From Haliotis rubra (taxonomy: Eukaryota), in NCBI RefSeq assembly GCF_003918875.1, contig NW_025767220.1, forward strand, positions 496,001 through 560,000: 64,000 nt of DNA, read 5' to 3'. Numbering within the stretch: the stretch's first letter is position 1; each line of letters starts with the position of its first letter. Under the pieces are notes generated by a model that was given only the letters and a program-made list of their open reading frames with translations, was not told the origin of the DNA and did not search any database. Positions 330-39,420 of the stretch are shown here, one piece after another. Made by a program: the position numbers and the translations under genes.

Positions 330-1880
330 TTACAATAGTGGTAGCTAATGAGATAGGTGACAATCATCTTGAGATGTCTCACCTCACAGACAAAGCATAA
401 TATGAAGACGAAGACAAGAGACAATTGTTTAACAATGTACGGCTTTTACACGAAGGTTTACATGTATTATCTATTTGAAGACATCCAAGTGACCCTCGAT
501 CGTGCTGTAACCATTATCAAAGACATAAATGCTGATGCTGCAGATTCAAACCAATGGGAAAGATAAGAAATATGGTTAGTCGACTATGATGCCAACTAAC
601 GCCCGTTTCTCCTGAAAGCCTTGTCATTTGAAACATGGTACACAGTTCATGTGTTTTGTAATCTATGAAACTATATCTATATCTCCCGAACTGATCCAGA
701 CAGTCAAATACGAGCGGTTGTATTGATTAAATATGACAAACAGTTGGCGATCGAAGGGATTGAGTATGGTTTAACATCAGAAACTATATATACAATCGGA
801 TACAAGATATATGACGTTGTTCATGCTGGGCTCTCTTAAAACAAGTGTCCTTGGAAGACTGTCTAACTTTGTCTTGGAAACAAAAGAAACAAATAAACTG
901 GTGCATATGATGGAATGCCTTAAATTGTTTCAATGTGTTTCATATTTCGCATTCACATAGAACTTATGATAGAAATGAAGACCAGGTCACCATAAACTCC
1001 TTTCCAACACGTCCATGTCATGGGGTATGGTGACTCAGCTTCAGTCAGGTCACCATCAACTCTAACACGTCCATGTGACAAGCACGGGACACCAATACTC
1101 TTCCCGTGTCCGCGGGGAGATAGCACTTAGTTTGAACTATCGGTGTTTCCCACACCAAAGGACCAGCAACATGAAACGTTTCTGTCCTCACTATAAATCT
1201 ACTTGCCACTTCACAAACTGTCAATATACTTTGGCCCCAGGTTTATTTGTCGATCGCGATATTGCATCGGTTTGACTCAAAATCAAACACAAGCGTTTTT
1301 TCTCTTTGTTTGAAACTGATGTTTTTCCTGCTGAAATATTTAAGAATGTTGGAACAAAGTAGCCCGAGGTTAGATTGTCAGTTGGAACCGTTGTCTGCGT
1401 ATCAACACTCCCTTCAGCATCTATTGGAAGATGTGGAAGATGCAAGGTTGGATGTAAATGTTTCAAGCAGATTTTCAGTTTCACAAGGAGAAAGAATTCA
1501 GAACCGGTGTGACTTAGTAACCTAAAATAAAGCGTTTGACAAAATAATATAACCATTTGTACATTATCGTCACTACAACGATGGTAGTTATAATTTGGTT
1601 TGTTTTGTTTTGTTTGTTTTTGTTCTCTTTTTACACCATTGAAATAACATACGTAGTACTGAACGAGACAATACTGACAGACATCAATCATGATTATATA
1701 TCATCTGTCAGTTCAGGTACAGAGATTTTCTAAAACTGTAACCGTTGGGACGCTGTTGGAACTACACAGTTCATGTCTTCTACGAAATAACAACATGATG
1801 AAGGTCAAGATGTTCCACTTCATGTGTAACGTTTGTTTCGCAAGGTTACAACATGAACAGCTCCGTGCAAATACTGATAG
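330..1880 (+). repeat. Third, older direct paralog of the duplicated segment
   Basis: 340-850 aligns at ~70-75% to 10835-11460 (VYMYY..ED...AVTII...NQWER in both). 1114-1425 is ~98% identical to 11813-12124. Confidence 0.85.
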
Positions 1881-1904
1881 TATATACGGACTCATTATAT
1901 CAGG

Positions 1905-3430
1905 CTGAGTCAAAAAGAAACTTCACAAAATGTAATTTGAAAAATAATGAATAATTTTTCCCTGATGATACATCTATGTATCCGAAATGGGATCCCTATC
2001 TTTCGACTCTAGAAAAACGTTAGCAAAACCCACTCAAACCCATCCATTCGTCGTGCAAATGACGTTAGTGCAAAATCAGGTTTTGCACGTGCAGTCGATC
2101 ACGTGATCTTCGCATCGAAGTTTTCTTCATATGCACGTGTTTGCATTGGCCTCAAGAATTGAAAAAACTCTTTTAAACCACAGTTCTAACGGTACTTGAA
2201 ATGCCACGATTGTCAAATGTGCAACGTGATCGTGCCGTTGGCATGTTGCAAGCGGGAAGATCAGTTATTGACGTCGCAAGAGCAATGGGATGCAGCCGTC
2301 GTACTGTGTATGACTTGCGAGGTCGTCTGCAACACTATGGCACCACTTCTGATCGCCCAAGGTCGGGTCGTCCACGTGTGACGTCACGAGCAGAAGACCG
2401 TCAAATCGTCCTACGTCACCTACGTGACAGATTTCTGCCGGCTTCACGAACCAGGGCTGAGATGTTTAGAGGTCGACTGTCCTCACAGACCATTCGAAAT
2501 CGGTTGCGGGCTGCCAATCTCTATTCTCGACGTCCATATCGTGGGCCAATATTGACACCGTTTCATCAACGTCAACGTCTGCTGTGGGCCCAACGTCACC
2601 TCCGATGGACCCAGAGAGATTGGAATCGAGTCGTCTTTAGCGATGAATCCAGGTTTACCCTCAGATTCGCGGACGGCAGGCATAGAGTCAGGTGACGACG
2701 TCGTGAATGGTATGCCCAATGTTGTGTACAGGAAGTCGACAGATTCGGGGGCGGAAGTTGCATGGTGTGGGTGCCTTCTTTGGGAACAACCGTTCCCGAC
2801 TTCTGGTCATCCGTGGAAACCTCACAGCTACTGCTTACCGCGACCAGGTGCTCACCCCTTAACTCGTTCCTTTCATGGCGGCTCATGGACCAGGTCTACA
2901 GTTCCAGCATGATAATGCTCGGCCGCATACCGCGATGTTGACACGAAATTTCCTTCAAAACGCTGGAATCAACGTCATGGACTGGCCATCGAGGTTCCCT
3001 GACCTTAATCCAATAGAGCACATTTGTGATGCACTTGGGAGAAGGCTTCGTGGTCTTAGGAACCAACCTCAGAATTTGCAGGAACTTGGCGCTGCCTTGC
3101 AAGAGCAATGGCGCAGAATCCCCAACCACGTATTCACAAGCATCAGGCAGTCGATGAGGAGACGGTGTTTGGCAGTGGTGAATGCGCGGGGCGGCCATAC
3201 ACGATATTGAACTGAGAAATTTCGCATTTTTATTCTTGTGACTTGACATTCTGTATACCCATGTTTTGGAACGGCGGTGTAGCCTAATGGAACTGATTAT
3301 GGCACTGTCATTGTATCGAGTACATCACACAGATCTCAGCAATGAAAAAATAACAATTTAACCATCTTACCATCTCTTGTCCTTTTATAGTGCCCTGAAG
3401 AAAGAATGTGAAGTTTCTTTTTTGACTCAG
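1905..3430 (+). mobile_element. Tc1/mariner DNA transposon (Tc1, DD34E), full length but inactive
   Basis: TIRs ctgagtcaaaaagaaacttcaca (1905-1927) and tgtgaagtttcttttttgactcag (3407-3430), followed by TATA. It encloses a transposase. The empty site is visible in the duplicate copy at 13017-13020. Confidence 0.95.
2201..3210 (+). pseudogene. Tc1-family transposase pseudogene
   Basis: N-terminal HTH with RSGRPR, VVFSDESRF, GGGSCMVW and QHDNARPH...DLNPIEH (D34E spacing counted), ending GGHTRY. Broken by TGA at 2693-2695, a frameshift near 2770 and a TAA near 2860. Confidence 0.93.
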
Positions 3431-4049
3431 TATATTTGTCTTGCTCTTTACCCATTGGAAGGGCATATACAACTTTGGAATAGATAATTGTGCTATTTTA
3501 TCTGTTACATTAAAGGCAATTTGTGTTTTACAACAGTAAGGAGCTTTTATTGAACTCATATTGATCCATGGACGGGTGTAATATCAACAGAATTGACATG
3601 ACATTTATTTGTATAATTTACATTTCGTTTAGAATGAAAACTGATGCAGTTTTTACATGATGCAGTTATTAAACAGATCAAGTGCAAGAGATACTGACTC
3701 AATAATAATGCTGAAACTCTAATGTGGGTTGTTTTTGTAAGTATACGTTTCAACATGTAGCATCCTGTCTTAAACTGCCACGTGGACATACGGACATGGA
3801 AAATGCATTTAATTTTGAAAGAAAAAGAAATATATTTTCTTACCAACTGTTGATAAGTGCCTGTCTGGATGAAAAACATAATAATAACCATTCAGTATCC
3901 ATATTTGTCATCAGCAAATACAGACACATCTCGTAAATAATCATTGTTTATTGAAAAGAAATTATATAAAACTTGAGAAGAATTTATATTATAAGTATTA
4001 ATTCTCAATGCTCAGGTTATAGATTTTATAAAATAGAAAAAAAATAACA

Positions 4050-5000
4050 TATCCCTGTGAGTGTCTCCTCGCCGAAGTCATTATTATCCAGACAAGCGTT
4101 GTGAACTGCTCTGAATGAAACCCTGGTGGAATAACAGTTTGGCATTGTAGTTGCTGCACAGCAAGGGCAGTGTCGTGTTCCAGTGTGACCGAATGAGAGA
4201 CACAATGACCGAAAGAATTCATCAGTTGTTGAAGCTTGGCAGACCCCGTAAGATGCCGTATGGTCATGCCCAGTGCAAGGTGTTTAGGCATCAAAGTTCT
4301 GCCTTGTGTTGCCAGTGTGATCATGTCTTGTGCAACAGAAATGACTTTCTTCTGATTTTCTTCCCTCTGCAATTTCCCTCTGCAACACCATACCAGAACA
4401 TTAAAAAGCTGTGGTGGAATAATTTTCTCAGAAGATGATAATGTCATATCACATGCATTAGGAGGCCATGTATCAACACTAGGACAGGAAGACACAGCAG
4501 CATGTATAATTATAGCGGCTCTGTAGAGTTGAACAAAATCATCCTGTAATGAGTTTTGAACACTATGACTGGAGATAACCCCTTCACCAAGATCACTATC
4601 TGATTCACTGTCACTACATGGAATGTTGATCAAGGACGATTTTCCTGTCTTGTTGTAGTACACAAACTCACAGCAAATTGATTTAGGCTGTAGAAACTCC
4701 AAAATTGTATACTTTGACTGGAGTCGTGATTTTAACTGGCTGTACTGTTTCTATATATTATGTCAAATCCTTCTGTTTCTTTAATTTCTGTCAAGAGGGA
4801 CATCTTCAACACTTCCTCATTTGATATCAACCGCTCTTCTATGACATGTGAACAAAATAAATCAAATGTTTTTTGCCAGTGGCTTGGGTCCTGCACCTAT
4901 TTTCAATAATATCCGCTCATCATTCCTTATCTTGGCAGCCTCTAATAGTCTTTCTGATTGGCTGAAAGTCTGCCGTATTATAGAGGCTAATTGCTAATTA
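4050..5000 (-). pseudogene. Frameshifted fragment of a large DNA-transposon protein, Academ-like (CXC-associated) transposase
   Basis: ORF 3998-4702 contains PKHLALGMTIRHLTGSAKLQQLMNSFGHCVS. A one-base frameshift restores FTTLVWDNNDFGEETLTG. Both motifs are recalled from invertebrate transposase-derived proteins, so the superfamily call is an inference. Confidence 0.55.
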
Positions 5001-5800
5001 ATGAACCGCTAATTTTACAAGAACATTCATGATTTTTATTCAGATAAGGGTAAATGCAATTATCATACCAATATCAGGTATTCACTAAAACCTTTAAGCA
5101 CTATGATACAATTTTAAAGGTCGGCCCACGGCCTATATTGTGAGGACTGGTTGAATGTCTTGACTCCATATAGAGTTGATAAAACAATCTAAACAGTATT
5201 TGTCTTTATCTAGTGGCCGGCAGGTTGCCGTTTCTCTAACGTTGCCGCTTAATATTTATATGGATAAAAGAACTGGAGGCGCTCAGAAATCTCAATATAC
5301 AGTCCTTGGGATTAAATGTCATAATTGTTTTATTAGGATATTATATTTCGTTTTGTATTTTTATCAACAAATGGCCAAGACATGTTTACATTAGACCGTT
5401 TGTCCAGATAAAAGGGTGATTTAATTACATACACAGTGGAGTCCTGTTCACCTTTGTTTTATACTTCGGTCCAAATGGAACCTGTCCCGTCGGACCGGAT
5501 GTTTTCTTGCATTGACACTTACGTAACTTCCTGTTATGCAAATTATGTGAGTGCCAGGTGTTGCCGTTGGACATGGTTCCCCTTTTGCAAACACCTGGTG
5601 TCATCACTGTTAGTGATTTATCCTTTATTCTCACATATTACCTATCGTGTTAATGTATTATTCCAATATGTATGTAGAGCTCACGCAAATGTTGAACAGT
5701 TTCCACTCAGTAACGCGTTTCGTCATCGTCGAACTGGGAACAGTTAAGCTTGAGTGTCACTGAACATGGTGTGAAAAGGTTGTCAGTATTGTGGGTCTAC

Positions 5801-5900
5801 CACACCACACCTCGCCTCACCTCACCTCACCTAATACCACCTTACCACACCACACATCACCTCACCTTACCACGCTCCACCTGACCTCATCACACATCAC
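5801..5900 (+). repeat. Degenerate (CACCT/CACAC)n microsatellite
   Basis: cacctcacctcacct tract. Copies at 15361-15460 and, inverted and longer, at 24715-24885. Confidence 0.85.
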
Positions 5901-6029
5901 TTCATCCAGCTGTCCTTACTCAGTCAGCTCCTTGCACATGCTGCTTGCTTTCACCAAGCCTTCACGCTTGGCTTTCCTTAAAATAATGTCCCCAATTTAA
6001 GGCTATTACTATTCAAAGCGGGGTTATAA

Positions 6030-6209
6030 TGAATAAAACCTCTTTAATCCGGAACCTGTCAATCTGGACCCTGTCTTCCAGACGATTATTGTTGGAACGT
6101 TAATATATATGAAAGAACACGACAGTGCATGATTCTTCATTCTGGAAACTTGGTAATCAAGACCATTTCACTTAGACGACTCCGTCCGGACTAATCAGGT
6201 TCATCTGTA
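6030..6209. mobile_element. Old pogo/Tigger-like MITE remnant
   Basis: Degenerate inverted ends aaaacctctttaatccgga ... tccggactaatcaggttcatctgta. Also present near 15596-15741 and inverted near 24404-24585. Confidence 0.4.
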
Positions 6210-7751
6210 CTAACACGACGTTTAACTGGGGAAAGTGAGAGACGTCCGGAACACTGAATACTGGATCAAGCGTGCATTTTAAGACCGAGTGGGCGTATGT
6301 GTAAACTGAGTTGAATGTTTAGAGCAAGGACTGAACAATATCTACTTGGAAATTCTCTCCTTTGTCCTTCAAACCCTGAAACAAACAATTTTAGTCTCTC
6401 ACGCACATCGGAAGTACGGGCACAGCGTTTGAAGCAAAGACATCATGGGCTATCTCTTTCACCTCACTTAACAATGACTGGAACCGGTGATAGGTCGGGC
6501 CATTTGCCATTTAACCACACAACAGGTAATCCCGCTGTTACTAAGTGCTAGTCTGGGTGTCTATAAGACAGAATGTTGGTGATTCAAATCTAGCCAAAGA
6601 TCTCAGCTATTCACATTATCACAGATTATAGAAAGCAAACCTAACATTGCAATCCTGATTAGTATCTCGGAGCATAATGTAATGAATGTTCGTTCGGAAA
6701 AGTAAAATTAATACCTTATCAATTTCTTTAGTAAGTGCTTGAATGCGTGGTGAACGAAAGAAAGAGAGAGTAAAAAGAGAACGGTCAACAAAACAACATT
6801 TACACTAACATTGTATCCAACACCCGTGGCTCGTTTACGAAAGCTAAGGAATAACTTATTTTCATCACGAGTTTTGACCTGCTTCACAAGAGGTCCACTC
6901 TTCCTTGATAACGGTATAAGATTCTATACTGTAACGTCGCATCATAATATAATAAAGATGTTGTCATCTATAAAGCATCCTTCTCTGAATTTCTTGTTTC
7001 GTCCAATTAACAACGTGAAATGAATCAGAAAGGACGGACACTGCTTCAGTATTTGTGGCTTTGACTTCATTTCGAACGTTCAGATCTGAGATCCATTTTC
7101 TTAGGTCTACATTTGTATTCTGATCAAACTTTATCACTTTGGTCATTCCAGAGTTTGTCTCTCACCTGCATCCCTAAGTACGTACAGGCCTGACCTTCCA
7201 CGAGATGGTCACTATCTCCTCCCCCAATAAATTAGTGATCCTCCTTCTTCTATGTTGCCACTTGTAAGATCAAGAGCGTTGTTTTCGTGGAACCAAGAAC
7301 GTAAGAATGTCATTGGAAAAGGACTCAACAAACAGAATCTGCCTTTTGGCAAGAGGATCAAGGTCATTCACGTCAAGTGTGTAAGATGTATTGAGCACCT
7401 TGACTGAGAATGCCCAGAATGATATCCGTCAGTTTGGTACTGTATATTTGAATGGGTTTTAGGATATGTCACATACGCACACCAGCAATGCAGCTGTTTT
7501 TGTTTCGTTTTTCATCATGTATGTGATGTCACACTAGAATTGCCGTATAGAGCCGTGCTCCATATCACAAAACGTGATCACTAAAGTTCGACAAACAACA
7601 TGCACGCAGGATAATAAGCAGCCTTGATTATCCGCCGAAACTCCGGTATCATTTGGCAAAATACCTGTGAAAATGAATGAATTATGTATTTAATAATCTT
7701 TAAATCTGGACAAGCTATTTAATGAATCATTTTGTCTCGACCATCTATAGT

Positions 7752-8250
7752 ATGACAAATTTTATCTTGCCTCACACGTAAGTGTCGTTTTCTGATTGGC
7801 TAAGCGCTCTTCTATTAATTTCAATGTACCCCCGCTTACACGCGAGTAACATTTGCTATGTACTCCGCTGGGAATGCCGAACTCAATTGGTACTTCTTAG
7901 TAGTAATTCTTATCTCGAATAACATTGAATCACGTAATGATGTACGGAAATTACCGATGTTTTGCGAATGCAAATCGATGGAGGGGAGATAACTCTAAAT
8001 TTGTTTTTCTTGTCGTCTTGTCGTCTGGTACTCCATACTATGATCCGGTACCCGTGCTTCAAACAGTTCAAAATTACCATTGATGTGTTCGGTAAGATAA
8101 ATACGTTGTTCACTGGTCCCTCGGGGCCCATGGGTTGATGTACCCTCGATGTTTCTTTATGTTCCCCTCGGCCTTCGGGCTCAGGATATATAAGCAAATA
8201 CCGAGGGTATATCAGCCCATGTCCCCCACGAGACCAATGAACAACTATAT
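7752..8250 (+). mobile_element. Non-autonomous element ending in a ~140-bp palindrome (Crypton-like)
   Basis: Absent from the inverted paralog (junction near 23245-23265). 8105-8245 folds back on itself around cTTCGg. Duplicate near 17284-17782. Confidence 0.55.
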
Positions 8251-9306
8251 CTTATGACATCCAGTCCTCCGAACAGTAATTGTAAAATAATTGCAGGTCT
8301 GATGAAAATATGCAATGTCATCAGTTCCCCCATTCTTACACTCCTTTGTCCATAGACCAGCACTATGATTTCATCTGATTCATCCAAACAAAAAGCGGCA
8401 ACCCCAGAGAATAACCAGCCTCGATTCCATTGGACGTTAAACCAAAGAGCGGTAAAGTCAAGTATCCGCCACGTGAGTTGTATATAATTGTACACTGTTG
8501 ACGATAGGATTGTCAATCACATCTCACGAAACTGACATTTGAAAGAATCGGGAGAAAGTTTTTCACTCCAACTGGATCGTGTTCGTATCTTCAAGTGACA
8601 GTATAAGGCAGGATGTTACATGTATATATGTACATATACTAATAAAACTCCAAATCGACGGTTGAACAGATGAGTGTTCAAAGATATTTGAACTTTTGGT
8701 TAAGCTATTAAGATTGCAACGTTTTCGTTGTCACCGACATTTACGGCCATATTAATTCCGATGACATCAATTGATATATGTTCTAACCATATGCCTAATG
8801 CACTCGGTGTTGTAGAGTACAAATTGGTCTTAATGTAACCGACAACACGGATATATGGACCCATGGAATCGGGTAGTTAGTATTTGTATAGAACTTATAC
8901 AATTGTAACCTTGCAACGCAAAGTTGCTCATGAAGTGGAATAATCTTTACTGTCACCATGTTGTTATATGGTAGAAAACACGAACTGTTGAGTCCCGACA
9001 TCGTCCCAACTATCAGTCTCTGTCAGAAAACCTCTGTGCTCGTCTTGATAGATGCTATATATCTGGACGGTTTGTCGACAGCGGGGTAGGCGAGTGGGTG
9101 AATTGTTGATATCGAAGGGATATTGCTTTCAGTGCCGTAAAACTCACTCACTGCTTAATTTCAGTGGTATACTTGACAGAAACAGGAGGGAACGCTAGTA
9201 TGGTTACTCCATGGTTATCTCCTGTTTCTGTCAATACCAAGGAGAGCAATGTTGATTGTATGTCATAGAATTGGATTTTGTGTCTTGTGTGTCTACATAT
9301 TTGACA

Positions 9307-9547
9307 CCCGTGAAGGTCTGGGTTAGAATATTTATCTTCAGTAATCCATGCTTGTCGTAAGTGGCGACTAACGGGACCGAGCGGTCAGGCTCGCTGACTT
9401 GGTTTACACAGGTCATCGGTTCCCAGTTGCGTAGAACGATGCTCATGCTGTTGATCACTGGATTGTCTGGTCCAGACGCGATTATTAACATACCACCGCC
9501 ATACAGCTGGGATATTGCTGTGTGCAGCGTAAAACTAAACTCACTCA
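9307..9547 (+). mobile_element. SINE-like family A (structured non-tRNA head, (CACT)n tail)
   Basis: cccgtgaagg...gcttgtcgtaagtggcgactaacggg...gtaaaactaaactcactca, flanked by a 14-bp TSD ctacatatttgaca. Duplicate at 18832-19072. Confidence 0.9.
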
Positions 9548-9659
9548 CTACATATTTGACAAAGCGCTTTAGATGGTATTTGAAAATGTTGCAGTTAACA
9601 ATATACGTATCGTTATTAGTATCCCGCCATCTGATCGAGCAGAACGATGGTTGTCAGTA

Positions 9660-12335: not shown

Positions 12336-13635
12336 CAACTTCTTGAACTCTGATGAACTATCCAATAGATGGTCGAGACGAAATGTTTCGCTAAACAGGT
12401 TGTCCAGATAAAGGAATAATTTAATTACAAACATGGCACATTCATGTTCACATATATGTTTGCCAAATGGTACCGGGGTTTCGGCGTATAAACAAGTCTG
12501 GTTATTGACGGGGCTCTATTGGAAGATGTGGAAGATGCTAGGTTGGATATAAATGTTTCAGGCAGATTTTCAGTTTCACAAGGAGAAAGAATTCAAAACC
12601 GGTGTGACTTAGTAACCTAAAATAAAGCCTAAGACAAAATAATATAACCAGTTTTACATTATCGTCACTACAATGATGGTAGTTATTATTTGTTTTGTTT
12701 TGTTTTGTTTTGTTTGCTGGGTGTGTTTTTTTCTTTTTCATCTTTTTTTTACACCATTGAAATAACATACGTAGTACTGAACGAGACAATACTGACAGAC
12801 ATCAATCATGATTATATATCATCTGTCAGTTCAGGTACAGAGATTTTCTAGAACTGTAACCGTTGGGACGCTGTTGGAACTACACAGTTCATGTCTTCTA
12901 CGAAATAACAACATGATGAAGGTCAAGATGTTCCACTTCATGTGTAACGTTTGTTTCGCAAGGTTACAACATGAACAGTTCCGTGCAAATACTGATAGCC
13001 TGATAAAATGAGTCCGTATATTTGTCTTGCTCTTTACCCCCTGGAAGGAGATATACAACTTTGGAATAGATAATTGTGCTATTTTATCTGTTACATTAAA
13101 GGCAATTTGTGTTTTACAACAGTAAGGCACGTTTATTGAACTCATATTGATCCATGGACGGGTGTAATATCAACAGAATTGACATGACATTTATTTGTAT
13201 AATTTACATTTCGTTTAGAATGAAAACTGATGCAGTTTTTACATGATGCAGTTATTAAACAGATCAAGTGCAAGAGATACTGACTCAATAATAATGCTGA
13301 AACTCTAATGTGGATTGTTTTTGTAAGTATACGTTTCAACATGTAACATCCTGTCTTAAACTGTCACGTGGACATACGGACATGGAAAATGCATTTAATT
13401 TTGAAAGCAAAAGAAATATATTTTCTTACCAACTGTTGATAAGTGCCTGTCTGGATGAAAAACATAATAATAACCATTCAGTATCCATATTTGTCATCAG
13501 CTAATACAGACACATCTCGTAAATAATCATTGTTTATTGAAAAGAAATTATATAAAACTTGAGAAGAATTTATATTATAAGTATTAATTCTCAATGCTCA
13601 GGTTATAGATTTTATAAAATAGAAAAAAAATAACA

Positions 13636-14580
13636 TATCCCTGTGAGTGTCTCCTCGCCGAAGTCATTATTATCCAGACAAGTATTGTGAACTGCTCTGA
13701 ATGAAACCCTGGTGGAATAACAGTTTGGCGTTGTAGTTGCTGCACAGCAAGGGCAGTGTCGTGTTCCAGTGTGACCGAATGAGAGACACAATGACCGAAA
13801 GAATTCATCAGTTGTTGAAGCTTGGCAGACCCCGTAAGATGCCGTATGGTCATGCCCAGTGCAAGGTGTTTAGGCATCAAAGTTCTGCCTTGTGTTGCCA
13901 GTGTGATCATGTCTTGTGCAACAGAAATGACTTTCTTCTGATTTTCTTCCCTCTGCAATTTCCCTCTGCAACACCATACCAGAACATTAAAAAAGCTGTG
14001 GTGGAATAATTTTCTCAGAAGATGATAATGTCATATCACATGCATTAGGAGGCCATGTATCAACACTAGGACAGGAAGACACAGCAGCATGTATAATTAT
14101 AGCGGCTCTGTAGAGTTGAGCAAAATCATCCTGTAATGAGTTTTGAACACTATGACTGGAGATAACCCCCTTCACCAAGATCACTATCTGATTCACTGTC
14201 ACTACATGGAATGTTGATCAAGGACGATTTTCCTGTCTTGTTGTAGTACACAAACTCACAGCAAATTGATTTAGGCTGTAGAAACTCCAAAATTGTATAC
14301 TTTGACTGGAGTCGTGATTTTAGCTGACTGTTTCTATATATTATGTCAAATCCTTCTGTTTCTTTAATTTCTGTCAAGAGGGACATCTTCAACACTTCCT
14401 CATTTGATATCAACCGCTCTTCTATGACATGTGAACAAAATACATCAAATGATTTTGCCAGTGGCTTGGGTCCTGCACCTATTTTCAATAATATCCGCTC
14501 ATCATTCCTTATCTTGGCAGCCTCTAATAGTCTTTCTGATTGGCTGAAAGTCTGCGGTATTATAGAGGCTAATTGCTAAT
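13636..14580 (-). pseudogene. Second copy of the Academ-like transposase fragment
   Basis: Same sequence split into ORFs 13584-13958, 13987-14202 and 14150-14488 by different single-base indels. Confidence 0.55.
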
Positions 14581-17500
14581 TAATGAACCGCTAATTTTAC
14601 AAGAACATTCATGATTTTTATTCAGATAAGGGTAAATGCAATTATCATACCAAGATGAGGTATTCACTAAAAACGTTTAGCACTATGATACAATTTTAAA
14701 GGTCGGCCCACGGCCTATATTGTGAGGACTGGTTGAATGTCTTGACTCCATATAGAGTTGATAAAACAATCTAGTGGCCGGCAGGTTGCCGTTTCTCTGA
14801 CGTTGCCGCTTAATATGTATATGGATAAAAGAACTGGAGGCGCTCAGCAATCTCAATACACTGTCCTTGGGATTAAATGTCATCATTGTTTTAGTAGGAT
14901 ATTATATTTCGTTTTGTATTTTTATCAACAAATGGCCAAGACATGTTTACATTAGACCGTTTGTCCAGATAAAAGGGTGATTTAATTACATACACAGTGG
15001 AGTCCTGTTCACCTTTGTTTTATACTTCGGTCCAAATGGAACCTGTCCCGTCGGACCGGATGTTTTCTTGCATTGACACTTACGTAACTTCCTGTTATGC
15101 AAATTATGTGAGTGCCAGGTGTTGCCGTTGGACATGGTTCCCCTTTTGCAAACACCTGGTGTCATCACTGTTAGTGATTTATCCCTTATTCTCACATATT
15201 ACCTATCGTGTTAATGTATTATTCAAATATGTATGTAGAGCTCACGCAAATGTTGAACAGTTTCCACTCAGTAACGCGTTTCGTCATCGTCGAACTGGGA
15301 ACAGTTAAGCTTGAGTGTCACTGAACATGGTGTGAAAAGGTTGTCAGTATTGTGGGTCTACCACACCACACCTCGCCTCACCTCACCTCACCTAATACCA
15401 CCTTACCACACCACACATCACCTCACCTTACCACGCTCCACCTCACCTCATCACACATCACTTCATCCAGCTGTCCTTACTCAGTCAGCTCCTTGCACAT
15501 GCTGCTTGCTTTCACCAAGCCTTCACGCTTGGCTTTCCTTAAAATAATGTCCCCAATTTAAGGCTATTACTATTCAAAGCGGGGTTATAATGAATAAAAC
15601 CTCTTTAATCCGGACGATTATTGTGGGAACGTTAATATATATGAAAGAACACGACAGTGCATGATTCTTCATTCTGGAAACTTGGTAATCAAGACCATTT
15701 CACTTAGACGACTCCGTCCGGACTAATCAGGTTCATCTGTACTAACACGACGTTTAACTGGGGAAAGTGAGAGACGTCCGGAACACTGAATACTGGATCA
15801 AGCGTGCATTTTAAGACCGAGTGGGCGTATGTGTAAACTGATTTGAATGTTTAGAGCAAGGATTGAACAATATCTACTTGGAAATTCTCTCCTTTGTCCT
15901 TCAAACCCTGAAACAAACAATTTTAGTCTCTCACGCACATCGGAAGTACGGGCACAGCGTTTGAAGCAAAGACATCATGGGCTATCTCTTTCACCTCACT
16001 TAACAATGGCTGGAACCGGTGATAGGTCGGGCCATTTGCCATTTAACCACACAACAGGTAATCCCGCTGTTACTAAGTGCTAGTCTGGGTGTCTATAAGA
16101 CAGAATGTTGGTGATTCAAATCTAGCCAAAGATCTCAGCTATTCACATTATCACAGATTATAGAAAGCAAACCTAACATTGCAATCCTGATTAGTATCTC
16201 GGAGCATAATGTAATGAATGTTCGTTCGGAAAAGTAAAATTAATACCTTATCAATTTCTTTAGTAAGTGCTTGAATGCGTGGTGAACGAAAGAAAGAGAG
16301 AGTAAAAAGAGAACGGTCAACAAAACAACATTTACACTAACATTGTATCCAACACCCGTGGCTCGTTTACGAAAGCTAAGGAATAACTTATTTTCATCAC
16401 GAGTTTTGACCTGCTTCACAAGAGGTCCACTCTTCCTTGATAACGGTATAAGATTCTATACTGTAATGTCGCATCATAATATAATAAATATGTTGTCAAC
16501 TATAAAGCATCCTTCTTTGAATTTCTTGTTTCGTCCAATTAACAACGTGAAATGAATCAGAAAGGACGGACACTGCTTCAGTATTTGTGGCTTTGACTTC
16601 ATTTCGAACGTTCCGATCTGAGATCCATTTTCTTAGGTCTACATTTGTATTCTGATCAAACTTTATCACTTTGGTCATTCCAGAGTTTGTCTCTCACCTG
16701 CATCCCTAAGTACGTACAGGCCTGACCTTCCACGAGATGGTCACTATCTCCTCCCCCAATAAATTAGTGATCCTCCTTCTTCTATGTTGCCACTTGTAAG
16801 ATCAAGAGCGTTGTTTTCGTGGAACCAAGAACGTAAGAATGTCATTGGAAAAGGACTCAACAAACAGAATCTGCCTTTTGGCAAGAGGATCAAGGTCATT
16901 CACGTCAAATGTGTAAGACGTATTGAGCACCTTGACTGAGAATGCCCAGAATGATATCCGTCAGTTTGGTACTGTATATTCGAATGGGTTTTAGGATATG
17001 TCACATACGCACACCAGCAATTCAGCTGATTTCGTTACATTTTTCATCATGTATGTGATGTCACACTAGAATTGCCGTATAGAGCCGTGCTCCATATCAC
17101 AAAACGTGATCACTAAAGTTCGACAAACAACATGCACGCAGGATAATAAGCAGCCTTGATTATCCGCCGAAACACCGGTACCATTTGGCAAAATACCTGT
17201 GAAAATGAATGAATTATGTATTTAATAATCTTTAAATCTGGACAAGCTATTTAATGAATCATTTTGTCTCGACCATCTATAGTATGACAAATTTTATCTT
17301 GCCTCACACGTAAGTGTCGTTTTCTGATTGGCTAAGCGCTCTTCTATTAATTTCAATGTACCCCCGCTTACACGCGAGTAACATTTGCTATGTACTCCGC
17401 TGGGAATGCCGAACTCAATTGGTACTTCTTAGTAGTAATTCTTATCTCGAATAACATTGAATCACGTAATGATGTACGGAAATTACCGATGTTTTGCGAA

Positions 17501-19241
17501 TGCAAATCGATGGAGGGGAGATAACTCTAAATTTGTTTTTCTTGTCGTCTTGTCGTCTGGTACTCCATACTATGATCCGGTACCCGTGCTTCAAACAGTT
17601 CAAAATTACCATTGATGTGTTCGGTAAGATAAATACGTTGTTCACTGGTCCCTCGGGGCCCATGGGTTGATGTACCCTCGATGTTTCTTTATGTTCCCCT
17701 CGGCCTTCGGGCTCAGGGAATATAAACAAATACCGAGGGTATATCAGCCCATGTCCCCCACGAGACCAATGAACAACTATATCTTATGACATCCAGTCCT
17801 CCGAACAGTAATTGTAAAATAATTGCAGGTCTGATGAAAATATGCAATGTCATCAGTTCCCCCATTCTTACACTCCTTTGTCCATAGACCAGCACTATGA
17901 TTTCATCTGATTCATCCAAACAAAAAGCGGCAACCCCAGAGAATAACCAGCCTCGATTCCATTGGACGTTAAACCAAAGAGCGGTAAAGTCAAGTATCCG
18001 CCACGTGAGTTGTATATAATTGTACACTGTTGACGATAGGATTGTCAATCACATCTCACGAAACTGACATTTGAAAGAATCGGGAGAACGTTTTTTCACT
18101 CCAACTGGATCGTGTTCGTATCTTCAAGTGACAGTATAAGGCAGGATGTTACATGTATATATGTACATATACTAATAAAACTCCAAATCGACGGTTGAAC
18201 AGATGAGTGTTCAAAGATATTTGAACTTTTGGTTAAGCTATTAAGATTGCAACGTTTTCGTTGTCACCGACATTTACGGCCATATTAATTCCGATGACAT
18301 CAATTGATATATGTTCTAACCATATGCCTAATGCACTCGGTCTTGTAGAGTACAAATTGGTCTTAATGTAACCGACATAAGGACCCATGGAATCAGGTAG
18401 TTAGTATTTGTATAGAACTTATACAATTGTAACCTTGCAACGCAAAAGTTGCTCATGAAGTGGAATAATCTTTACTGTCACCATGTTGTTATATGGTAGA
18501 AAACACGAACTGTTGAGTCCCGACAGCGTCCCAACTATCAGTCTCTGTCAGAAAACCTCTGTGCTCGTCTTGATAGATGCTATATATCTGGACGGTTTGT
18601 CGACAGCGGGGTAGGCGAGTGGGTGAATTGTTGATATCGAAGGGATATTGCTTTCAGTGCCTTAAAACTCACTCACTGCTTAATTTCAGTGGTATACGTG
18701 ACAGAAACAGGAGGGAACGCTAGTATGGTTACTCCATGGTTATCTCCTGTTTCTGTCAATACCGAGGACAGCAATGTTGATTGTATGTCATAGAATTGGA
18801 TTTTGTGTCTTGTGTGTCTACATATTTGACACCCGTGAAGGTCCGGGTTAGAATATTTATCTTCAGTAATCCATGCTTGTCGTAAGTGGCGACTAACGGG
18901 ACCGAGCGGTCAGGCTCGCTGACTTGGTTTACACAGGTCATCGGTTCCCAGTTGCGTAGAACGATGCTCATGCTGTTGATCACTGGATTGTCTGGTCCAG
19001 ACGCGATTATTAACATACCACCGCCATACAGCTGGGATATTGCTGTGTGCAGCGTAAAACTAAACTCACTCACTACATATTTGACAAAGCGCTTTAGATG
19101 GTATTTGAAAATGTTGCAGTTAACAATATACGTATCGTTATTAGTATCCCGCCATCTGATCGAGCAGAACGATGGTTGTCAGTACTGCACAGATCTAGTT
19201 CAGTACTATGAATGTTGTGTCAGTGATGTATTGAACAACGT

Positions 19242-19430
19242 ACATGGGCAATCATTGTTGTGACAACTGACATGGGCAATCATTGTTGTGACAACTGACA
19301 TGGGCAATCATTGTTGTGACATGGGCAATCATTGTTGTGACAACTGACATGGGCAATCATTGTTGTGACAACTTACATGGGCAATCATTGTTGTGACAAC
19401 TGACATGGGCAATCATTGTTGTGACAACTT
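19242..19430 (+). repeat. Same 28-bp VNTR, 7 units (one truncated to 21 bp)
   Basis: Counted directly at the corresponding position in duplicate copy 2. Confidence 0.95.
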
Positions 19431-22400
19431 TGAGCAAGGATTACATCACCATTTCGTACCCTAACCTCAGGATAATAAGTAATATTGGTTTTGATTTCAT
19501 CATCGACAGATGCGTGAAACACTTTGTGTCCAACCTTAAACCTTGCATCTTCCACAGTAATAGAGTCCAAAGGGAGCGTTGATACGCAGAGAACTGTTCC
19601 AACTGACAATCAAATCTCGGGCTACTTTGTTCCAACATTTTGAAATATTTCAGCGTGAAAACAAAGAGGAAAAACGCTTGTGTTTGATTTTGAGTCAAAC
19701 CGATGCAAAATCGCGATCGACAAATAAACCTGGGGCCAAAGTATATTGACAGTTTGTGAAGTGGCAAGTAGATTTATAGTGAGAGGACAGAAACGTTTCA
19801 TGTTGCTGGTCCTTTGGTGTGGGAAACATCGATAGTTCAAACTATGTGCTATCTCCCCACGGAGATACCGGAGAGTGTCTCGTGTTTGCCACAGAAATGT
19901 GTTGGAAAGGTCTTGATGGTGACCTGATTGAAACTGTGTTGTCATATACCGTGACCTAGATGATTGTTCAAGCTATCAACTCCAGGTTTACATGACCCAG
20001 ATTCTATGTATTTAATTATATGTTTGGAATGTACCTGATGGGCATAGGCACCTTTCTTACTGAGACGTTCAACACATCGGTATTATATTGTGTAACCTAT
20101 TTCTGGTTCATAAGTTCGATGTGGAAACACCATATGCCCAAGTTAATTTGTTTATAAGGGCAAAATATTTTGCTTTTTTATTCGATGACGGCAAATAATT
20201 CTCTCGCACCGCATGTTTTTATTTACAAACAGTTCTGTATTTATAAGAGTCATTTCCTTCATCAACTCGTCCATCAATAACCCTACCACTGGCTCAACAT
20301 ATCAATGTTATAACCATGATGGTATCTGTCAACCTTGGAGGGGAATATCACATTCTATCACATCGTGCGAAGACTGTTATTCTCTGGCAATGACGTTTTA
20401 CGTCACATTTCCTGGTTTAAAACAGTAGTAGATAATGAGATTGGCTGCAATCATCTTGAGACATCTCACCGCCCAAACGTAGAAGAGTCTCCCAGACGAA
20501 AAGAAGGAAGACTGCAGATGCATGAGTGAGATTCCGTTACCCGTGGGAGGAATCGAATCCAGACGTTTTGCTTGGCTACCCAAACATAAACGTCCCATCG
20601 CCCTCTTTCAGAGTGTTAATACATGTACCACCACAGAAGCAGAATGCATTTACACAGAATGGTTTACATGTATTATATTCTTGAAGACAACCTAGAGACC
20701 CTCAGTCTTGCTGTAACCATTATCACACACTACTATGCTGATACTAAAGATACAAACCAGTGGGAAAGATCGGACATAAAGGTTAGTCGACTAGAATATC
20801 AATTATAGTCCGAATCTCCTGAAAACCTTGGCATTTGAAAAATGGGGCAGGGTTCATATATTTCAAGCTATGAAACATTATCTATATCTGCAGAACTGAT
20901 CACGAAAGTCAACTACGGGCGGTTGTATTGATTAAATGTGACGAAACGTTGGCGTTAAAAACCATTGAGTATAGTTTTACATTAGAAACTATCATGGAAT
21001 CGGATCCAAGATATGTGTTAGTTTCACTGGGCTCTCTTAAAACAAGGGTCTTATTTTCGCACAAAAACAAGCAAATCAATTGAGGCATATGATGACATAG
21101 ATTGTTTCTTAGCGTTTCCACATCGAACTTCTGTACCAGAAATAAGGTTTCACATACAATACCGATGTTTTGAAAGCCTCAGTCACAAAGCTGCCTGTGC
21201 CCATATTATCAACTTTACCTGACAACATCAGCTTCATTCCAAACATACAAGAAAATACTGAGAATCTGGGTCATGTAAACCTGGGGTTGATAGCATGAAC
21301 AATCATCTAGGTCACGGTATATGACAACTCAATCAGGCCATCATCAAGTCCTTCCCAACACATGTGACAAGCACCGGACTACAATACTCTCCCCGTTTCT
21401 CCTCGGGGAGATAGCGCTTAGTTTGAACTATCGATGTTTCCCACACCAAAGGACCAGCAACATGAAACGTTTCTGTCCTCACTATAAATCTACTTGCCAC
21501 TTTACAAACTGTCAATATACTTTGGCCCCAGGTTTATTTGTCGATCGCGATATTGCATCGGTTTGACTCACAATCAAACACAAGCGTTTTTCCTCTTTGT
21601 TTGAAACTCATGTTTTTCCTGCTGAAATATTTAAGAATGTTGGAACAAAGTAGCCCGAGATTTGATTGTCAGTTGGAACCGTTGTCTGCGTATCAACACT
21701 CCCTTCAGCATCTATTTTTGTGGAAGATGCAGAGTTTGATGCAAAATATTTCATGCAGTTTATCGATATTCTGATTGATAAGGAGGAAGGAACCAAGACC
21801 TCTGTAATTATTAACCTAAGTGTGAGGTCATGAAAGGATGATATAATCCTTGTACATTATCGTCATAACAATGATTGTCCATCCAAGATGTTGAATACCT
21901 CACTGAAACAACATACATAGTACTGTCAACTTCTTGAACTCTGATGAACTATCCAATAGATGGTCGAGACGAAATGTTTCGTTAAACAGGTTGTCCAGAT
22001 AAAGGAATCATTTAATTACAAACATGGCACATTCATGTTCACATATATGTTTGCCAAATCGTACCGGGGTTTCGGCGTATAATCAAGTCTGGTTATTGAC
22101 GGATTTTTTTTCATGTTGTTTGCCGAACTTCAGGGGTAATATTTTGGGGCATGGAGCACGGCTTAATTTGGCTATTACATACTTGATGTACATTTAAAAA
22201 CTGGCAGAAAATGATAGCTGGGACGCTGTCGGGACTCAGCAGTTCGTGTCTCCTACCATATAACAACATGGGGAAAATGAAGATGCTCCACTTCACTGCA
22301 ATTGGACCAGTTCTATAAAACAATACCACCTGCCGGATGCAGTCAATATATGTGTGTTGTCGGTTACATTAAGTACTCTACCGAGGGCATTAGGCATATT

Positions 22401-22586
22401 GTTAGAACATATATCAATCGATGTCATCGGAATTAATATGACGTAAATGTCGCTGACAACGAAAACGTTGCAATTTTAATACCCTAACCATACGTTCCAA
22501 TATCTTTATACACTCATCTGTTCAACTGTCGATTTGGAGTTTTATTAGTATCTGTACGTTTATACATGTAACTTCCTGCCTTATAC

Positions 22587-22843
22587 ACCCGTGAAGATCA
22601 GGGTTAGAATTTATCTTTAGTAACCAATGCTTGTCGTAAGAGGCGACTAACACGATCTGGTGGTCAGGCTCGTTGACTTGGTTGACACATGTCATCGCAA
22701 CCCATTTGGGTAGATCGATGCCCATGCTGTTGATCACTGGATTGTCTGGTCCAGACTCCATTATTTACAGACCGCCGGAATATAGCTGGAATATTGCTGA
22801 GTGTAACGTAAAACTAAAACTCACTCACTCACTCACTCACTCA
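22587..22843 (+). mobile_element. SINE-like family A
   Basis: Full head, body and (ctca)n tail. Absent from the inverted paralog near 8605. Confidence 0.9.
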
Positions 22844-38616: not shown

Positions 38617-39420
38617 CGTGAACATCCCGTTCTTCAGCAGGTAATGCTTGGCGTGAACATACCGGTTTTCAGCAGGTAATGCTTGACGTGAACATATCGG
38701 TCTTCAGCAGGTAATGCTTGACGTGAACACCCCGGTCTTCAGCAGGTAATGCTTGACGTGAACATATCGGTCTTCAGCAAGTAATGCTTGACGTGAACAT
38801 ATCGGTCTTCAGCAAGTAATGCTTGACGTGAACATACCGGTCTTCAGCAGGCAATGCTTGACGTGAACATACCTGTCTTCAGCAGGTAATGCTTGACGTG
38901 AACATACCTGTCTTCAGCTGGTAATGCTTGACATGCACATATCGGTATTCAGCAGACAATGCTTGACGTGCACATATCGGTCTTCAGCAGGTAATGCTTG
39001 ACCTGAACACCCCGGTTTTCAGCAGGCAATGCTTGACGTGAACACCCCGGTCTTCAGCAGGCAATGCTTGAGGTGAACATACCTGTCTTCAGCAGGTAAT
39101 GCTTGACGTGAACATATCGGTCTTCAGCAGGCAATGTTTGACGTGAACACCCCGTTATTCAGCAGGCAATGCTTGAAGTGAACGTACCGGTGTTCAGCAG
39201 GCAATGCTTGGCGTGTACATATCGGTCCTCAACAGGTAATGCTTGACGTGAACACATCGGTCTTCAACAGGTAATGCTTGACGTGAACATACCTGTCTTC
39301 AGCAGGTAATGCTTGGCGTGTACATATCGGTCTTCAACAGGTAATGCTTGATGTGAACATACCGGTCTTCAGCAGGCAATGCTTGATGTGAACATACCGG
39401 TCTTCAGCAAGTGATACTTG
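38617..39420 (+). repeat. 35-bp minisatellite, ~23 units
   Basis: Consensus cgtgaacatatcggtcttcagcaggtaatgcttga. Period measured from 38687 to 38722. Confidence 0.95.

What the first reader, a model, noticed from the sequence alone, without database searches (positions are those of the whole stretch)
1114..21718. A 200-310-bp core homogenised across five otherwise diverged paralogs, with patchwork variants indicating gene conversion
Seen: 1114-1425 and 11813-12124 differ at ~6 sites, while their upstream flanks are only ~70-75% identical. The inverted copies (10060-10253, ~19660-19857) are also near-identical in this core. Variants are shared across paralogs rather than within duplicates. 21653 reads gcccgagATTTgatt like the inverted arms (10001-10020), whereas its own duplicate at 12061 reads gcccgagGTTAgatt like 1362. 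The 19621-19770 arm carries right-arm alleles (ttggaacaaagt, caagcg, tctact) that its duplicate at 10021-10170 lacks. Inference: there is recent conversion between arms, and the core may be kept complementary for a function.
Basis: partly seen in the sequence, partly recalled or inferred. Interest (0 to 1): 0.7.

Follow-up and report, generated by a model that had tools for sequence, protein, structure and literature searches.

The report
Gene-conversion patch in abalone repeats
A roughly 300-base stretch in a repeat-rich, gene-poor part of the blacklip abalone genome has been copied between neighbouring old duplicates, so it is now almost identical while the DNA around it has drifted apart; this is a clear but ordinary case of gene conversion, with no sign that the identity serves a function.

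Summary
Five core copies lie at 1109-1425, 11808-12124 and 21400-21716 (+) and at 10258-9937 and 19863-19539 (-). c1 and c2 differ at 6 of 313 core sites, against 20-27% in homologous flanks.

They are three old lineages, not five. c2/c3 and c4/c5 belong to one ~98-99% identical 9.6-kb tandem unit pair.

A sixth copy 12 kb upstream is the control. Its flank is closest to c1's, yet its core is ~14% diverged from all five. Selection alone therefore cannot explain the identity; non-allelic recombination can.

The core occurs only at this locus, so it is not a high-copy repeat.

Mosaic variants are real in the assembly: 7 extra parsimony steps against about 1-2 expected.

Nothing supports the idea that complementarity is kept for function. 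There is no Rfam match, no unusual folding and no conserved ORF, and other 97-99% patches occur in the same arms.

The core looks like a promoter plus first exon (TATAAAT, conserved GT), but this is untested.

No reads were obtainable. So the two 9.6-kb units could be haplotypes joined in tandem, and polishing artefacts cannot be excluded.

This scan has reported gene conversion elsewhere in this genome.

The parts
1109..1425 (+). Core copy c1. The five-way homogenised part is 1113-1303 and the three-way part runs to 1425. It holds CTCACTATAAATCT at 1187-1200, a T-run at 1296-1301, an ATG at 1346, and GT at 1446-1447 just beyond the core.
11808..12124 (+). Core copy c2, the right arm of the first unit. 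It differs from c1 at 6 of 313 sites.
21400..21716 (+). Core copy c3, the right arm of the second unit. It differs from c2 at 6 core sites. Three of these match another paralog: 21633 matches c1, and 21660 and 21663 match c4/c5.
9937..10258 (-). Core copy c4, the inverted arm of the first unit. The five-way part is about 10060-10258. It has a 14-bp deletion after the T-run and carries private changes, including an AAG->CTT micro-inversion at 10023-10025.
19539..19863 (-). Core copy c5, the inverted arm of the second unit.
442..1108 (+). Old upstream flank of c1. It is homologous to 11054-11807 at about 73-80% and to the flank of the upstream copy c6 at about 85%.
9942..10435 (-). Left arm of the head-to-head inverted repeat. 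It pairs with 11634-12139 at 86% over 516 bp and contains c4.
10436..11633 (.). Spacer between the inverted arms. It shows only 3 differences from its counterpart 20041-21225, about 0.2% against about 1.2% elsewhere in the unit.
11634..12139 (+). Right arm of the inverted repeat. It contains c2.
1421..12511 (.). First 9.6-kb unit (11.1 kb with the Tc1 insertion). It is the first member of the 98-99% identical tandem pair.
12512..12520 (+). Non-homologous junction of the tandem pair. It consists of filler GGCT plus 'CTATT', which are the last five bases of the c1-type core. After it the sequence continues as 1426-1880.
12516..22102 (.). Second unit of the tandem pair. It contains c5 and c3.
12125..12511 (+). 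Segment d, the c2-type sequence downstream of the core. It is repeated at 21717-22102 and at the end of contig C857, where it follows a c1-type flank.
1900..3423 (+). Decayed Tc1/mariner element with about 24-bp inverted ends and a TA at the insertion site. It is present in the first unit only; the empty site is at about 12990-13009.
22201..25044 (+). Older inverted copy of 5634-9026, 76-98% identical. With c3 it mirrors c4 plus its downstream sequence, making a large old palindrome.
24057..24233 (+). Second high-identity patch in the old arms. It is 97-98% identical to 6356-6532 and 15888-16064, against 86-91% around it. It has no open frame and occurs at three places in the genome.

Best explanation
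The locus is a gene-poor, repeat-rich cluster of old local duplications in the blacklip abalone assembly. An ancestral segment of at least 1.1 kb was duplicated in tandem (c6, c1, c2/c3) and once in inverted orientation (c4/c5). Most of it has since diverged to 73-86% identity.

Inside it, a stretch of about 190-315 bp was copied between copies by non-allelic homologous recombination. The main process is short-tract gene conversion, with possible crossing-over. That reset c1, the right arm and the inverted arm to 97-100% identity.

Tract ends coincide with indels, which would stop heteroduplex extension. These are a 2-bp and a 7-bp indel at the left edge, a 14-bp deletion in c4/c5, and a 4-bp insertion in c1 at the right edge. 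Once a stretch is identical it recombines more readily, so the core can persist without any function.

The core looks like a TATA-box promoter plus a roughly 220-nt non-coding first exon with a conserved GT. That reading is inferred and untested.

Shown here: the identity contrast, the tree switch, the excess homoplasy and the locus-restricted copy number. Inferred: the mechanism, its timing (about the same age as the 1-2% divergence of the two units), and the promoter reading.
For: - Identity contrast. c1-c2 differ at 6 of 313 core sites against 27% in the flanks (p = 1.6e-26). c2-c4 differ by 3.1% in the five-way core against 15-28% beside it.
- Tree switch. In the flank (200-950), sites supporting c1=c6 number 94, against 34 and 28 for the alternatives. 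In the core (1109-1408), c1=c2 has 39 sites against 3 and 3.
- No sign of constraint. c1-c6 divergence is 13.7% in the core and 10.5% in the flank.
- Clustering of shared sites. A Sawyer-type run test on polymorphic sites gives p = 0.0003-0.006 for c1-c2, c1-c5, c2-c4 and c3-c4.
- Excess homoplasy. The duplication tree needs 7 extra steps, against a simulated mean of 0.9-1.9, with P(>=7) <= 0.002. Most of the conflicting sites are transversions or non-CpG changes; one (col 1247, C/T) sits in a CpG in c4.
- Low copy number. Only 8 copies exist in 1.38 Gb, all at this locus or its second representation on C857. This holds even for a 29-nt block with 3 mismatches allowed. A SINE in the same region returns dozens of hits, which shows the search does report repeats.
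- More of the same nearby. Other 97-99% patches occur in the same arms, and segment d is a three-way mosaic.
- A hybrid copy. The end of contig C857 joins the c1 flank to c2-type core and d, as non-allelic recombination inside the core would produce.
Against: - Single-site mosaics could therefore come from Pilon polishing with cross-mapped short reads. The assembly used Nanopore wtdbg/DBG2OLC, QuickMerge and one Pilon round.
- The two units differ by about 1.2-1.8%, which matches the published heterozygosity of 1.27-1.44%. c2/c3 and c4/c5 may therefore be alleles joined in tandem by mis-assembly.
- Most c4-versus-c5 differences need no conversion, because c4 is simply private at those sites.
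- The outgroup argument assumes c6 is not a fast-decaying dead copy.
- The simulation assumes equal rates across sites.
Confidence: 0.72

Rival explanations
1. Purifying selection alone. The core is a working promoter plus first exon, or a functional RNA, and is conserved by constraint in each copy while neutral flanks diverge. No sequence exchange is needed.
For: - The core carries a perfect TATAAAT in all five copies.
- A GT sits at the same alignment column in all six copies.
- CpG observed/expected is slightly raised, 1.07 against 0.6-0.8 in the flanks.
- A 29-nt block is identical in all eight assembled copies.
Against: - The sixth copy c6 is as diverged in the core (13.7%) as in its flank (10.5%). 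Its TATA reads CATAAAT.
- The ATG-initiated frame is broken or shifted in c4, c5, c6 and c2/c3.
- A 32-nt perfect run at 14% divergence is not unusual in 300 bp.
- The middle old tandem unit has lost the core altogether.
- Conflicting site patterns need exchange.
Confidence: 0.1
2. Assembly artefact. The two 9.6-kb units are the two haplotypes of one region, wrongly joined in tandem through the shared core-plus-d repeat. The patchwork variants are then allelic differences or polishing errors. Only three copies per haplotype exist.
For: - Unit divergence of about 1.2-1.8% matches the published heterozygosity of 1.27-1.44%. The assembly pipeline is prone to retained haplotigs.
- Contig C857 duplicates C2330:440-497.6 kb at about 99.8-99.9%. 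It stops 100 bp after the d/a' junction, exactly where a dangling second haplotype would end.
- Sequence downstream of c3 is single-copy in the assembly.
- The assembly holds 8 core copies, which equals 2 x 4.
Against: - This cannot explain the c1, right-arm and inverted-arm core identity, which involves copies with 73-86% identical flanks.
- The d/a' junction with filler bases is a normal tandem-duplication junction.
- C857's core-right and d differ from C2330's at 5 of about 510 positions, and two of those match c3. They are therefore not simply the same molecule assembled twice.
- Reads of several kb should span the 700-bp shared repeat.
- Even if this reading is true, variants shared between alleles of different paralogs still indicate interlocus conversion.
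Confidence: 0.35
3. Functional complementarity. The inverted cores are kept identical because a transcript through both arms folds into a long hairpin. That could be an endo-siRNA-type locus, or the arms could form a structure needed in DNA.
For: - Head-to-head arms 9942-10435 and 11634-12139 lie 1.2 kb apart. They are 86% complementary overall and 93-100% over about 190 bp.
- Another first-stage note flags 9660-12335 as a hairpin-RNA candidate.
Against: - The direct copy c1 is homogenised as strongly as the inverted ones, which complementarity does not require.
- The TATA-bearing strands point away from each other, so transcripts from them would not contain both arms.
- There is no Rfam match and folding is no better than shuffles, with z from -0.4 to 0.
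- Arm identity outside the core is only 64-91%, and other high-identity patches exist.
- No RNA data were obtainable.
Confidence: 0.06
4. The core is a young mobile element inserted independently beside each paralog.
For: The surrounding DNA is full of mobile-element debris: a Tc1/mariner, a SINE family, and a 1.1-kb TE-ORF fragment with a 99% copy on another contig.
Against: - The core is absent from the rest of the 1.38-Gb genome.
- Homology of the copies continues at lower identity on both sides of the core.
- A 14%-diverged copy sits at the equivalent place of an older unit.
Confidence: 0.01

Closest known systems
Interlocus (non-allelic) gene conversion between low-copy repeats and segmental duplications, as in globin genes and many tandem gene families (established knowledge)
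   Same: It shows a short tract of near-identity inside older, diverged duplicates. The tree switches between tract and flanks, variants are mosaic, and tract ends sit at indels.
   Different: Here the tract lies in apparently non-coding, unannotated DNA rather than in exons. It involves both direct and inverted copies. Read-level confirmation is missing.
Arm-to-arm gene conversion in large palindromes, such as the human Y-chromosome palindromes (recalled from memory)
   Same: The copies are inverted and head-to-head with a short spacer, and they exchange sequence.
   Different: Y palindrome arms are more than 99.9% identical along their whole length. Here the arms are 76-91% identical, with only a few patches of 95-100%.
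NAHR-mediated deletion or duplication between direct low-copy repeats (copy-number variation)
   Same: The end of C857 joins the c1 flank to the c2-type core and downstream sequence, with the switch inside the core between c1 1280 and 1301. That is what a crossover between c1 and c2 would leave.
   Different: It is seen only at a contig end, so it could be an assembly chimera. The contig stops before the structure can be followed.
Other gene-conversion findings of this scan in the same genome (peroxidase, sulfatase and TIR genes, a zinc-finger pseudo-exon)
   Same: The species and the process are the same, with short homogenised blocks between old paralogs.
   Different: Those blocks lie in coding exons or an exon-like block of annotated genes. 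This one lies in a region with no recognisable gene.
Hairpin-RNA (endo-siRNA) loci of flies and mammals (recalled from memory)
   Same: It has inverted repeats of a few hundred bp separated by about 1 kb.
   Different: No transcript or small RNA is shown. The promoter-like elements diverge. The direct copy is homogenised equally.

Membership tests
Interlocus gene-conversion tract | Identity inside the tract is far above that of homologous flanks | tested here: met
   c1-c2 divergence is 1.9% in the core against 20-27% in the flanks, p = 1.6e-26. Arm divergence is 3.1% against 15-28%.
Interlocus gene-conversion tract | Phylogenetic incongruence between tract and flanks, with an unconverted copy as control | tested here: met
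   Flank counts are c1=c6 94, against 34 and 28. Core counts are c1=c2 39, against 3 and 3.
Interlocus gene-conversion tract | Mosaic or incompatible sites beyond what recurrent mutation gives | tested here: met
   There are 7 extra parsimony steps against a simulated 0.9-1.9, P <= 0.002. Run test p = 0.0003-0.006.
Interlocus gene-conversion tract | Variants verified in raw reads or a second individual | not testable with these tools
Only a second assembled representation, C857, is available.
Palindrome with arm-to-arm homogenisation | Near-identity along the whole arms | tested here: not met
   Arms are 76-98% identical in 100-bp windows, and only patches are high.
High-copy interspersed repeat or transposable element | Many dispersed copies in the genome | tested here: not met
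   There are 8 copies, all at this locus or on C857. The SINE control returns dozens.
Pol III type-3 / snRNA-type gene (U6-like) | Proximal element at fixed distance upstream of the TATA box, as in the species' own U6 genes, and a known RNA family | tested here: not met
   Only an 8-mer, AGTTTGAA, is shared with abalone U6 promoters. It lies 63 bp upstream of the TATA here against 30 bp in U6. There is no Rfam match and folding z is about 0.
Promoter plus first exon of a Pol II gene | TATA box, transcription start, splice donor, downstream exons and a transcript | tested here: inconclusive
   TATAAAT is present in five copies and a GT is conserved in six. However, the ORF is not conserved, no homologous protein was found and no RNA data exist.
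Hairpin-RNA / endo-siRNA locus | A single transcript containing both arms, and small RNAs derived from it | not testable with these tools
   No RNA runs were obtainable. The geometry argues against it, because the promoter-like elements diverge.

The most novel reading that the evidence does not exclude
The core is the shared promoter and non-coding leader exon of an unannotated, abalone-specific transcript family, either a lncRNA or a hairpin/small-RNA precursor. Its regulatory module is kept uniform by concerted evolution while the transcript bodies diverge. The same recombination also generates copy-number variation at the locus.
Probability: 0.12. Interest if true: 0.45.

Novelty: new member of a known kind. 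Interest (0 to 1): 0.22.

Why it matters
This is a clean, well-controlled example of short-tract ectopic conversion in non-coding DNA of a mollusc. An internal unconverted copy separates conversion from selection. There is also a possible crossover product in the second assembled representation.

Its main practical value is as a caution. The locus sits where this heterozygous, meta-assembled genome keeps redundant sequence. Copy number and single-base 'alleles' there should not be trusted without reads.

It does not open a new biological question.

Tried and rejected
- Known RNA family. Rfam at gathering score over the whole window, and at E <= 10 over 900-1700, gave only chance-level bacterial sRNA hits.
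- Structured RNA. Folding of 1218-1300, 1200-1310 and the c6 equivalent gave z from -0.4 to 0.
- Pol III type-3 or snRNA-type gene (TATA plus a T-run about 100 nt later). Comparison with the abalone's own U6 and U2 upstream regions showed no shared proximal element at the right spacing.
- Protein-coding first exon. The frame from ATG 1346 is shifted or broken in other copies. Pfam found nothing. The 156-aa antisense ORF has no relatives.
- Downstream gene. The only long ORF in the unit (4001-4750, minus strand) belongs to a multi-copy family of uncharacterised TE-like proteins of sea urchin, sea cucumber, spider and Hydra. It is a 1.1-kb fragment with a 99% copy on contig C1702, so it is not a gene driven by the core.
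- High-copy repeat. Rejected.
- Reads or RNA runs.
- NAHR inside the core as the origin of the tandem pair. Rejected because the junction (12512-12520) is non-homologous, with filler bases.
- c5 converted by one long tract. Rejected because arm-specific states are interleaved with the sites where c5 matches the direct copies.
- The 32-nt block identical in c6 as a sign of constraint. A run of that length is not unusual at 14% divergence.
Full report
**Where this is**

The window is C2330:496001-560000 of a 1,378,282,171-base, 2,855-record assembly. That size equals the published blacklip abalone (Haliotis rubra) assembly of 1,378,265,264 bp in 2,854 scaffolds, plus about 16.9 kb. Earlier notes of this scan name the same species.

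The paper describes Nanopore wtdbg and DBG2OLC assemblies merged with QuickMerge. These were polished with Racon and one round of Pilon, scaffolded with RNA-seq and purged of haplotigs. Heterozygosity is given as 1.27-1.44%. This history matters below.

**The observation**

Self-comparison finds the core five times in the window:
- c1 at 1109-1425 (+)
- c2 at 11808-12124 (+)
- c3 at 21400-21716 (+)
- c4 at 10258-9937 (-)
- c5 at 19863-19539 (-)

A genome-wide search adds a sixth copy, c6. It lies 12 kb upstream of the window (C2330:483999-484363, about 85% identical). Two further copies sit at the start of contig C857.

In a multiple alignment, c1 and c2 differ at 6 of 313 ungapped core columns. 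Their flanks are homologous but only 73-80% identical upstream and about 72% downstream. Fisher's test gives p = 1.6e-26.

All five copies are 93-100% identical over c1 1113-1303. The three direct copies stay at 98% up to 1425.

**Architecture**

The five copies are not five independent paralogs. A 9.6-kb unit occurs twice in tandem, as [1421-12511] and [12516-22102]. The two are about 98-99% identical, with roughly 100 differences over 9 kb once the misaligned ends are left out. So c2/c3 are one pair and c4/c5 another.

The junction at 12512-12520 is non-homologous. The c2-type downstream segment 'd' (12125-12511) is followed by four filler bases. Then come 'CTATT', the last five bases of a c1-type core, and the sequence that follows c1.

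A decayed Tc1/mariner with a TA target site sits in the first unit only.

Within each unit the inverted arm and the right arm stand head-to-head, at 9942-10435 and 11634-12139 (86% over 516 bp, 1.2-kb spacer). This inverted homology continues at 76-98% for at least 3.4 kb. Region 5634-9026 mirrors 22201-25044, making an old large palindrome.

Upstream of the window, c6 and c1 end successive units of an older tandem array with a period of roughly 7.5 kb. The middle unit of that array has lost the core.

No long open frames or Pfam domains occur in the 40 kb around the cores. The exceptions are transposon debris and a 250-aa frame of a multi-copy, uncharacterised TE-like family.

**Not a mobile element**

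The core, the diverged c6 version, and a 29-nt block with up to three mismatches all hit only these eight places in 1.38 Gb. A SINE from the same region returns dozens of hits in the same tool.

**Conversion or selection**

The sixth copy serves as the control. I aligned c1, c2 and c6 as a trio.

| Region | c1=c6 | c2=c6 | c1=c2 |
|---|---|---|---|
| Upstream flank (200-950) | 94 | 34 | 28 |
| Core (1109-1408) | 3 | 3 | 39 |

The tree switches at the core boundary.

The c1-c6 divergence in the core (13.7%) is not lower than in their flank (10.5%). Constraint strong enough to hold c1 and c2 at 98% is therefore not visible in c6. Its TATA also reads CATAAAT.

The frame starting at ATG 1346 is shifted or interrupted in c4, c5, c6 and c2/c3.

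A Sawyer-type permutation of polymorphic sites gives significant runs of shared sites for c1-c2 (p = 0.001), c1-c5 (0.0003) and c2-c4 and c3-c4 (0.002).

I conclude that non-allelic homologous recombination, not selection, made the core uniform. Tract edges coincide with indels: a 2-bp and a 7-bp indel on the left, a 14-bp deletion in c4/c5, and a 4-bp insertion in c1 on the right. That fits heteroduplex extension being stopped by heterology. This last step is inference.

**The patchwork variants**

The site table shows the following for c2 against c3, which differ at six core sites:
- two are private to c3;
- one is private to c2;
- one is shared by c3 and c1 (A at 12041/21633);
- two adjacent sites are shared by c3 with c4 and c5 (the ATTT/GTTA case).

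c4 and c5 differ at nine columns. At most of these c4 is simply unique. The changes are a precise AAG->CTT 3-bp inversion, a 1-bp deletion and two substitutions. The 'right-arm alleles' of c5 are therefore mostly retained ancestral states. Only two sites, where c4 agrees with c6, hint at conversion of c5.

Over the whole core the known duplication tree needs 7 extra steps, and the best of all 105 trees needs 6. Simulated independent mutation on that tree gives a mean of 0.9-1.9, with P(>=7) <= 0.002. Most of the conflicting sites are transversions or non-CpG changes; one (col 1247, C/T) sits in a CpG in c4.

Exchange after the split of the units is thus supported, but by only four or five sites.

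**The second representation**

C857:1-57 kb repeats C2330:440-497.6 kb in reverse at about 99.8-99.9%. The differences include real substitutions, so it is probably the other haplotype. C2330:300 kb has no such partner.

Its last 842 bases are a hybrid:
- Upstream, it matches the c1 flank and left core, with no difference across roughly 750 bp.
- The switch lies between c1 1280 and 1301.
- Beyond that it is c2-type core, then d, the junction and 100 bp of the next unit.
- This right part differs from C2330's c2 at 5 of about 510 positions, and two of those match c3.

This is what a crossover between c1 and c2, or an ectopically templated repair, would leave. It could also be a chimeric contig end.

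**What cannot be settled**

Two readings of the tandem pair remain. It may be a true duplication in at least one haplotype. The ordinary non-homologous junction favours this, as does the fact that C857's d is not identical to C2330's. Alternatively, two haplotypes of one unit were joined through the shared core-plus-d repeat. Three things favour that: the unit divergence equals the species' heterozygosity, C857 dangles exactly there, and the downstream sequence is single-copy.

I put the false-duplication reading at roughly one in three. Under either reading the main result stands, because c1, the right arm and the inverted arm are old paralogs. Under the second reading the patchwork becomes polymorphism shared between paralogs, which again points to interlocus conversion. 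Pilon polishing with cross-mapped reads could also create some single-site mosaics.

**Function**

The core has promoter-like and exon-like features:
- a perfect TATAAAT in all five copies (1192-1198 in c1);
- a T-run about 100 nt later;
- a GT at the same column in all six copies (1446-1447 in c1);
- a slightly raised CpG ratio.

It therefore resembles a TATA promoter with a non-coding leader exon of about 220 nt.

Tests for a known function came back empty:
- There is no Rfam family.
- Folding is no better than shuffles.
- Abalone U6 promoters share only an 8-mer, at the wrong spacing.
- No protein relatives were found.

The idea that the inverted cores are kept complementary is not supported. 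The direct copy c1 is homogenised just as strongly. The TATA-bearing strands diverge. Other patches of 97-99% identity lie in the same arms, for example 24057-24233 against 6356-6532, which is also non-coding and locus-specific.

**Verdict**

The gene-conversion reading is right for the core. It is weaker for the 'recent arm-to-arm' claim. It is unsupported for function.

The phenomenon is well known, and this scan has already reported it in several gene families of the same genome. Interest is low. The main open issue is technical: reads are needed to fix the copy number and the single-base variants.

Noticed in passing
window 1900-3423: A decayed Tc1/mariner element (HTH_Tnp_Tc3_2 and DDE_3 fragments, about 24-bp inverted ends, TA at the site). 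It is present in the first 9.6-kb unit but absent from the second, whose empty site is at about 12990-13009. It is therefore an insertion younger than the split of the two units, or an insertion polymorphism between haplotypes.
   Followed up: partly
window 10440-11760 vs 20045-21352: The spacer between the inverted arms shows only 3 differences in 1.3 kb between the two units. The rest of the unit shows about 1.2%. This is either a further recent exchange or a patch of low heterozygosity.
   Followed up: partly
window 24057-24233, 6356-6532, 15888-16064: A second 177-bp patch of 97-98% identity lies inside 86-91% identical old inverted arms. In the + copy it is bounded by AG and GT. It has no open frame and occurs at only these three places in the genome.
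   Followed up: partly
window 9682-9852 and 19207-19454: A 28-bp minisatellite downstream of the inverted cores differs by 77 bp between units. It grew from a sequence that is single-copy downstream of c1 and c2.
   Followed up: partly
window 3794-4917 and 13380-14499; L023/L024 (C1702:1288450-1289567): A 1.1-kb fragment carries a 250-aa frame of a multi-copy, uncharacterised TE-like protein family with relatives in echinoderms, a spider and Hydra. A 99% identical copy lies on another contig, with no other shared flank.
   Followed up: partly
C857:1-57410 vs C2330:440001-497600 (L012, L014, L015, L047): About 57 kb or more of the assembly is represented twice at 99.8-99.9% identity. This is probably a retained haplotig end attached to a 1.69-Mb contig. 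It ends inside the repeat studied here.
   Followed up: partly
L013 5514-6158 (window -4481 to -3854): In the middle unit of the older tandem array, a 36-bp minisatellite stands where the core is expected.
   Followed up: no
window 63182-63691: An open frame here holds a hormone-receptor (HRM) domain (Pfam PF02793, E = 1e-7). It is probably the first coding exon of a class-B GPCR gene.
   Followed up: partly
window 33353-36223, 38617-39426, 53705-55662: Three large minisatellite arrays with periods of about 36, 35 and 70 bp. N-gaps at 51963-52090 and 56604-56865 were left untouched.
   Followed up: no
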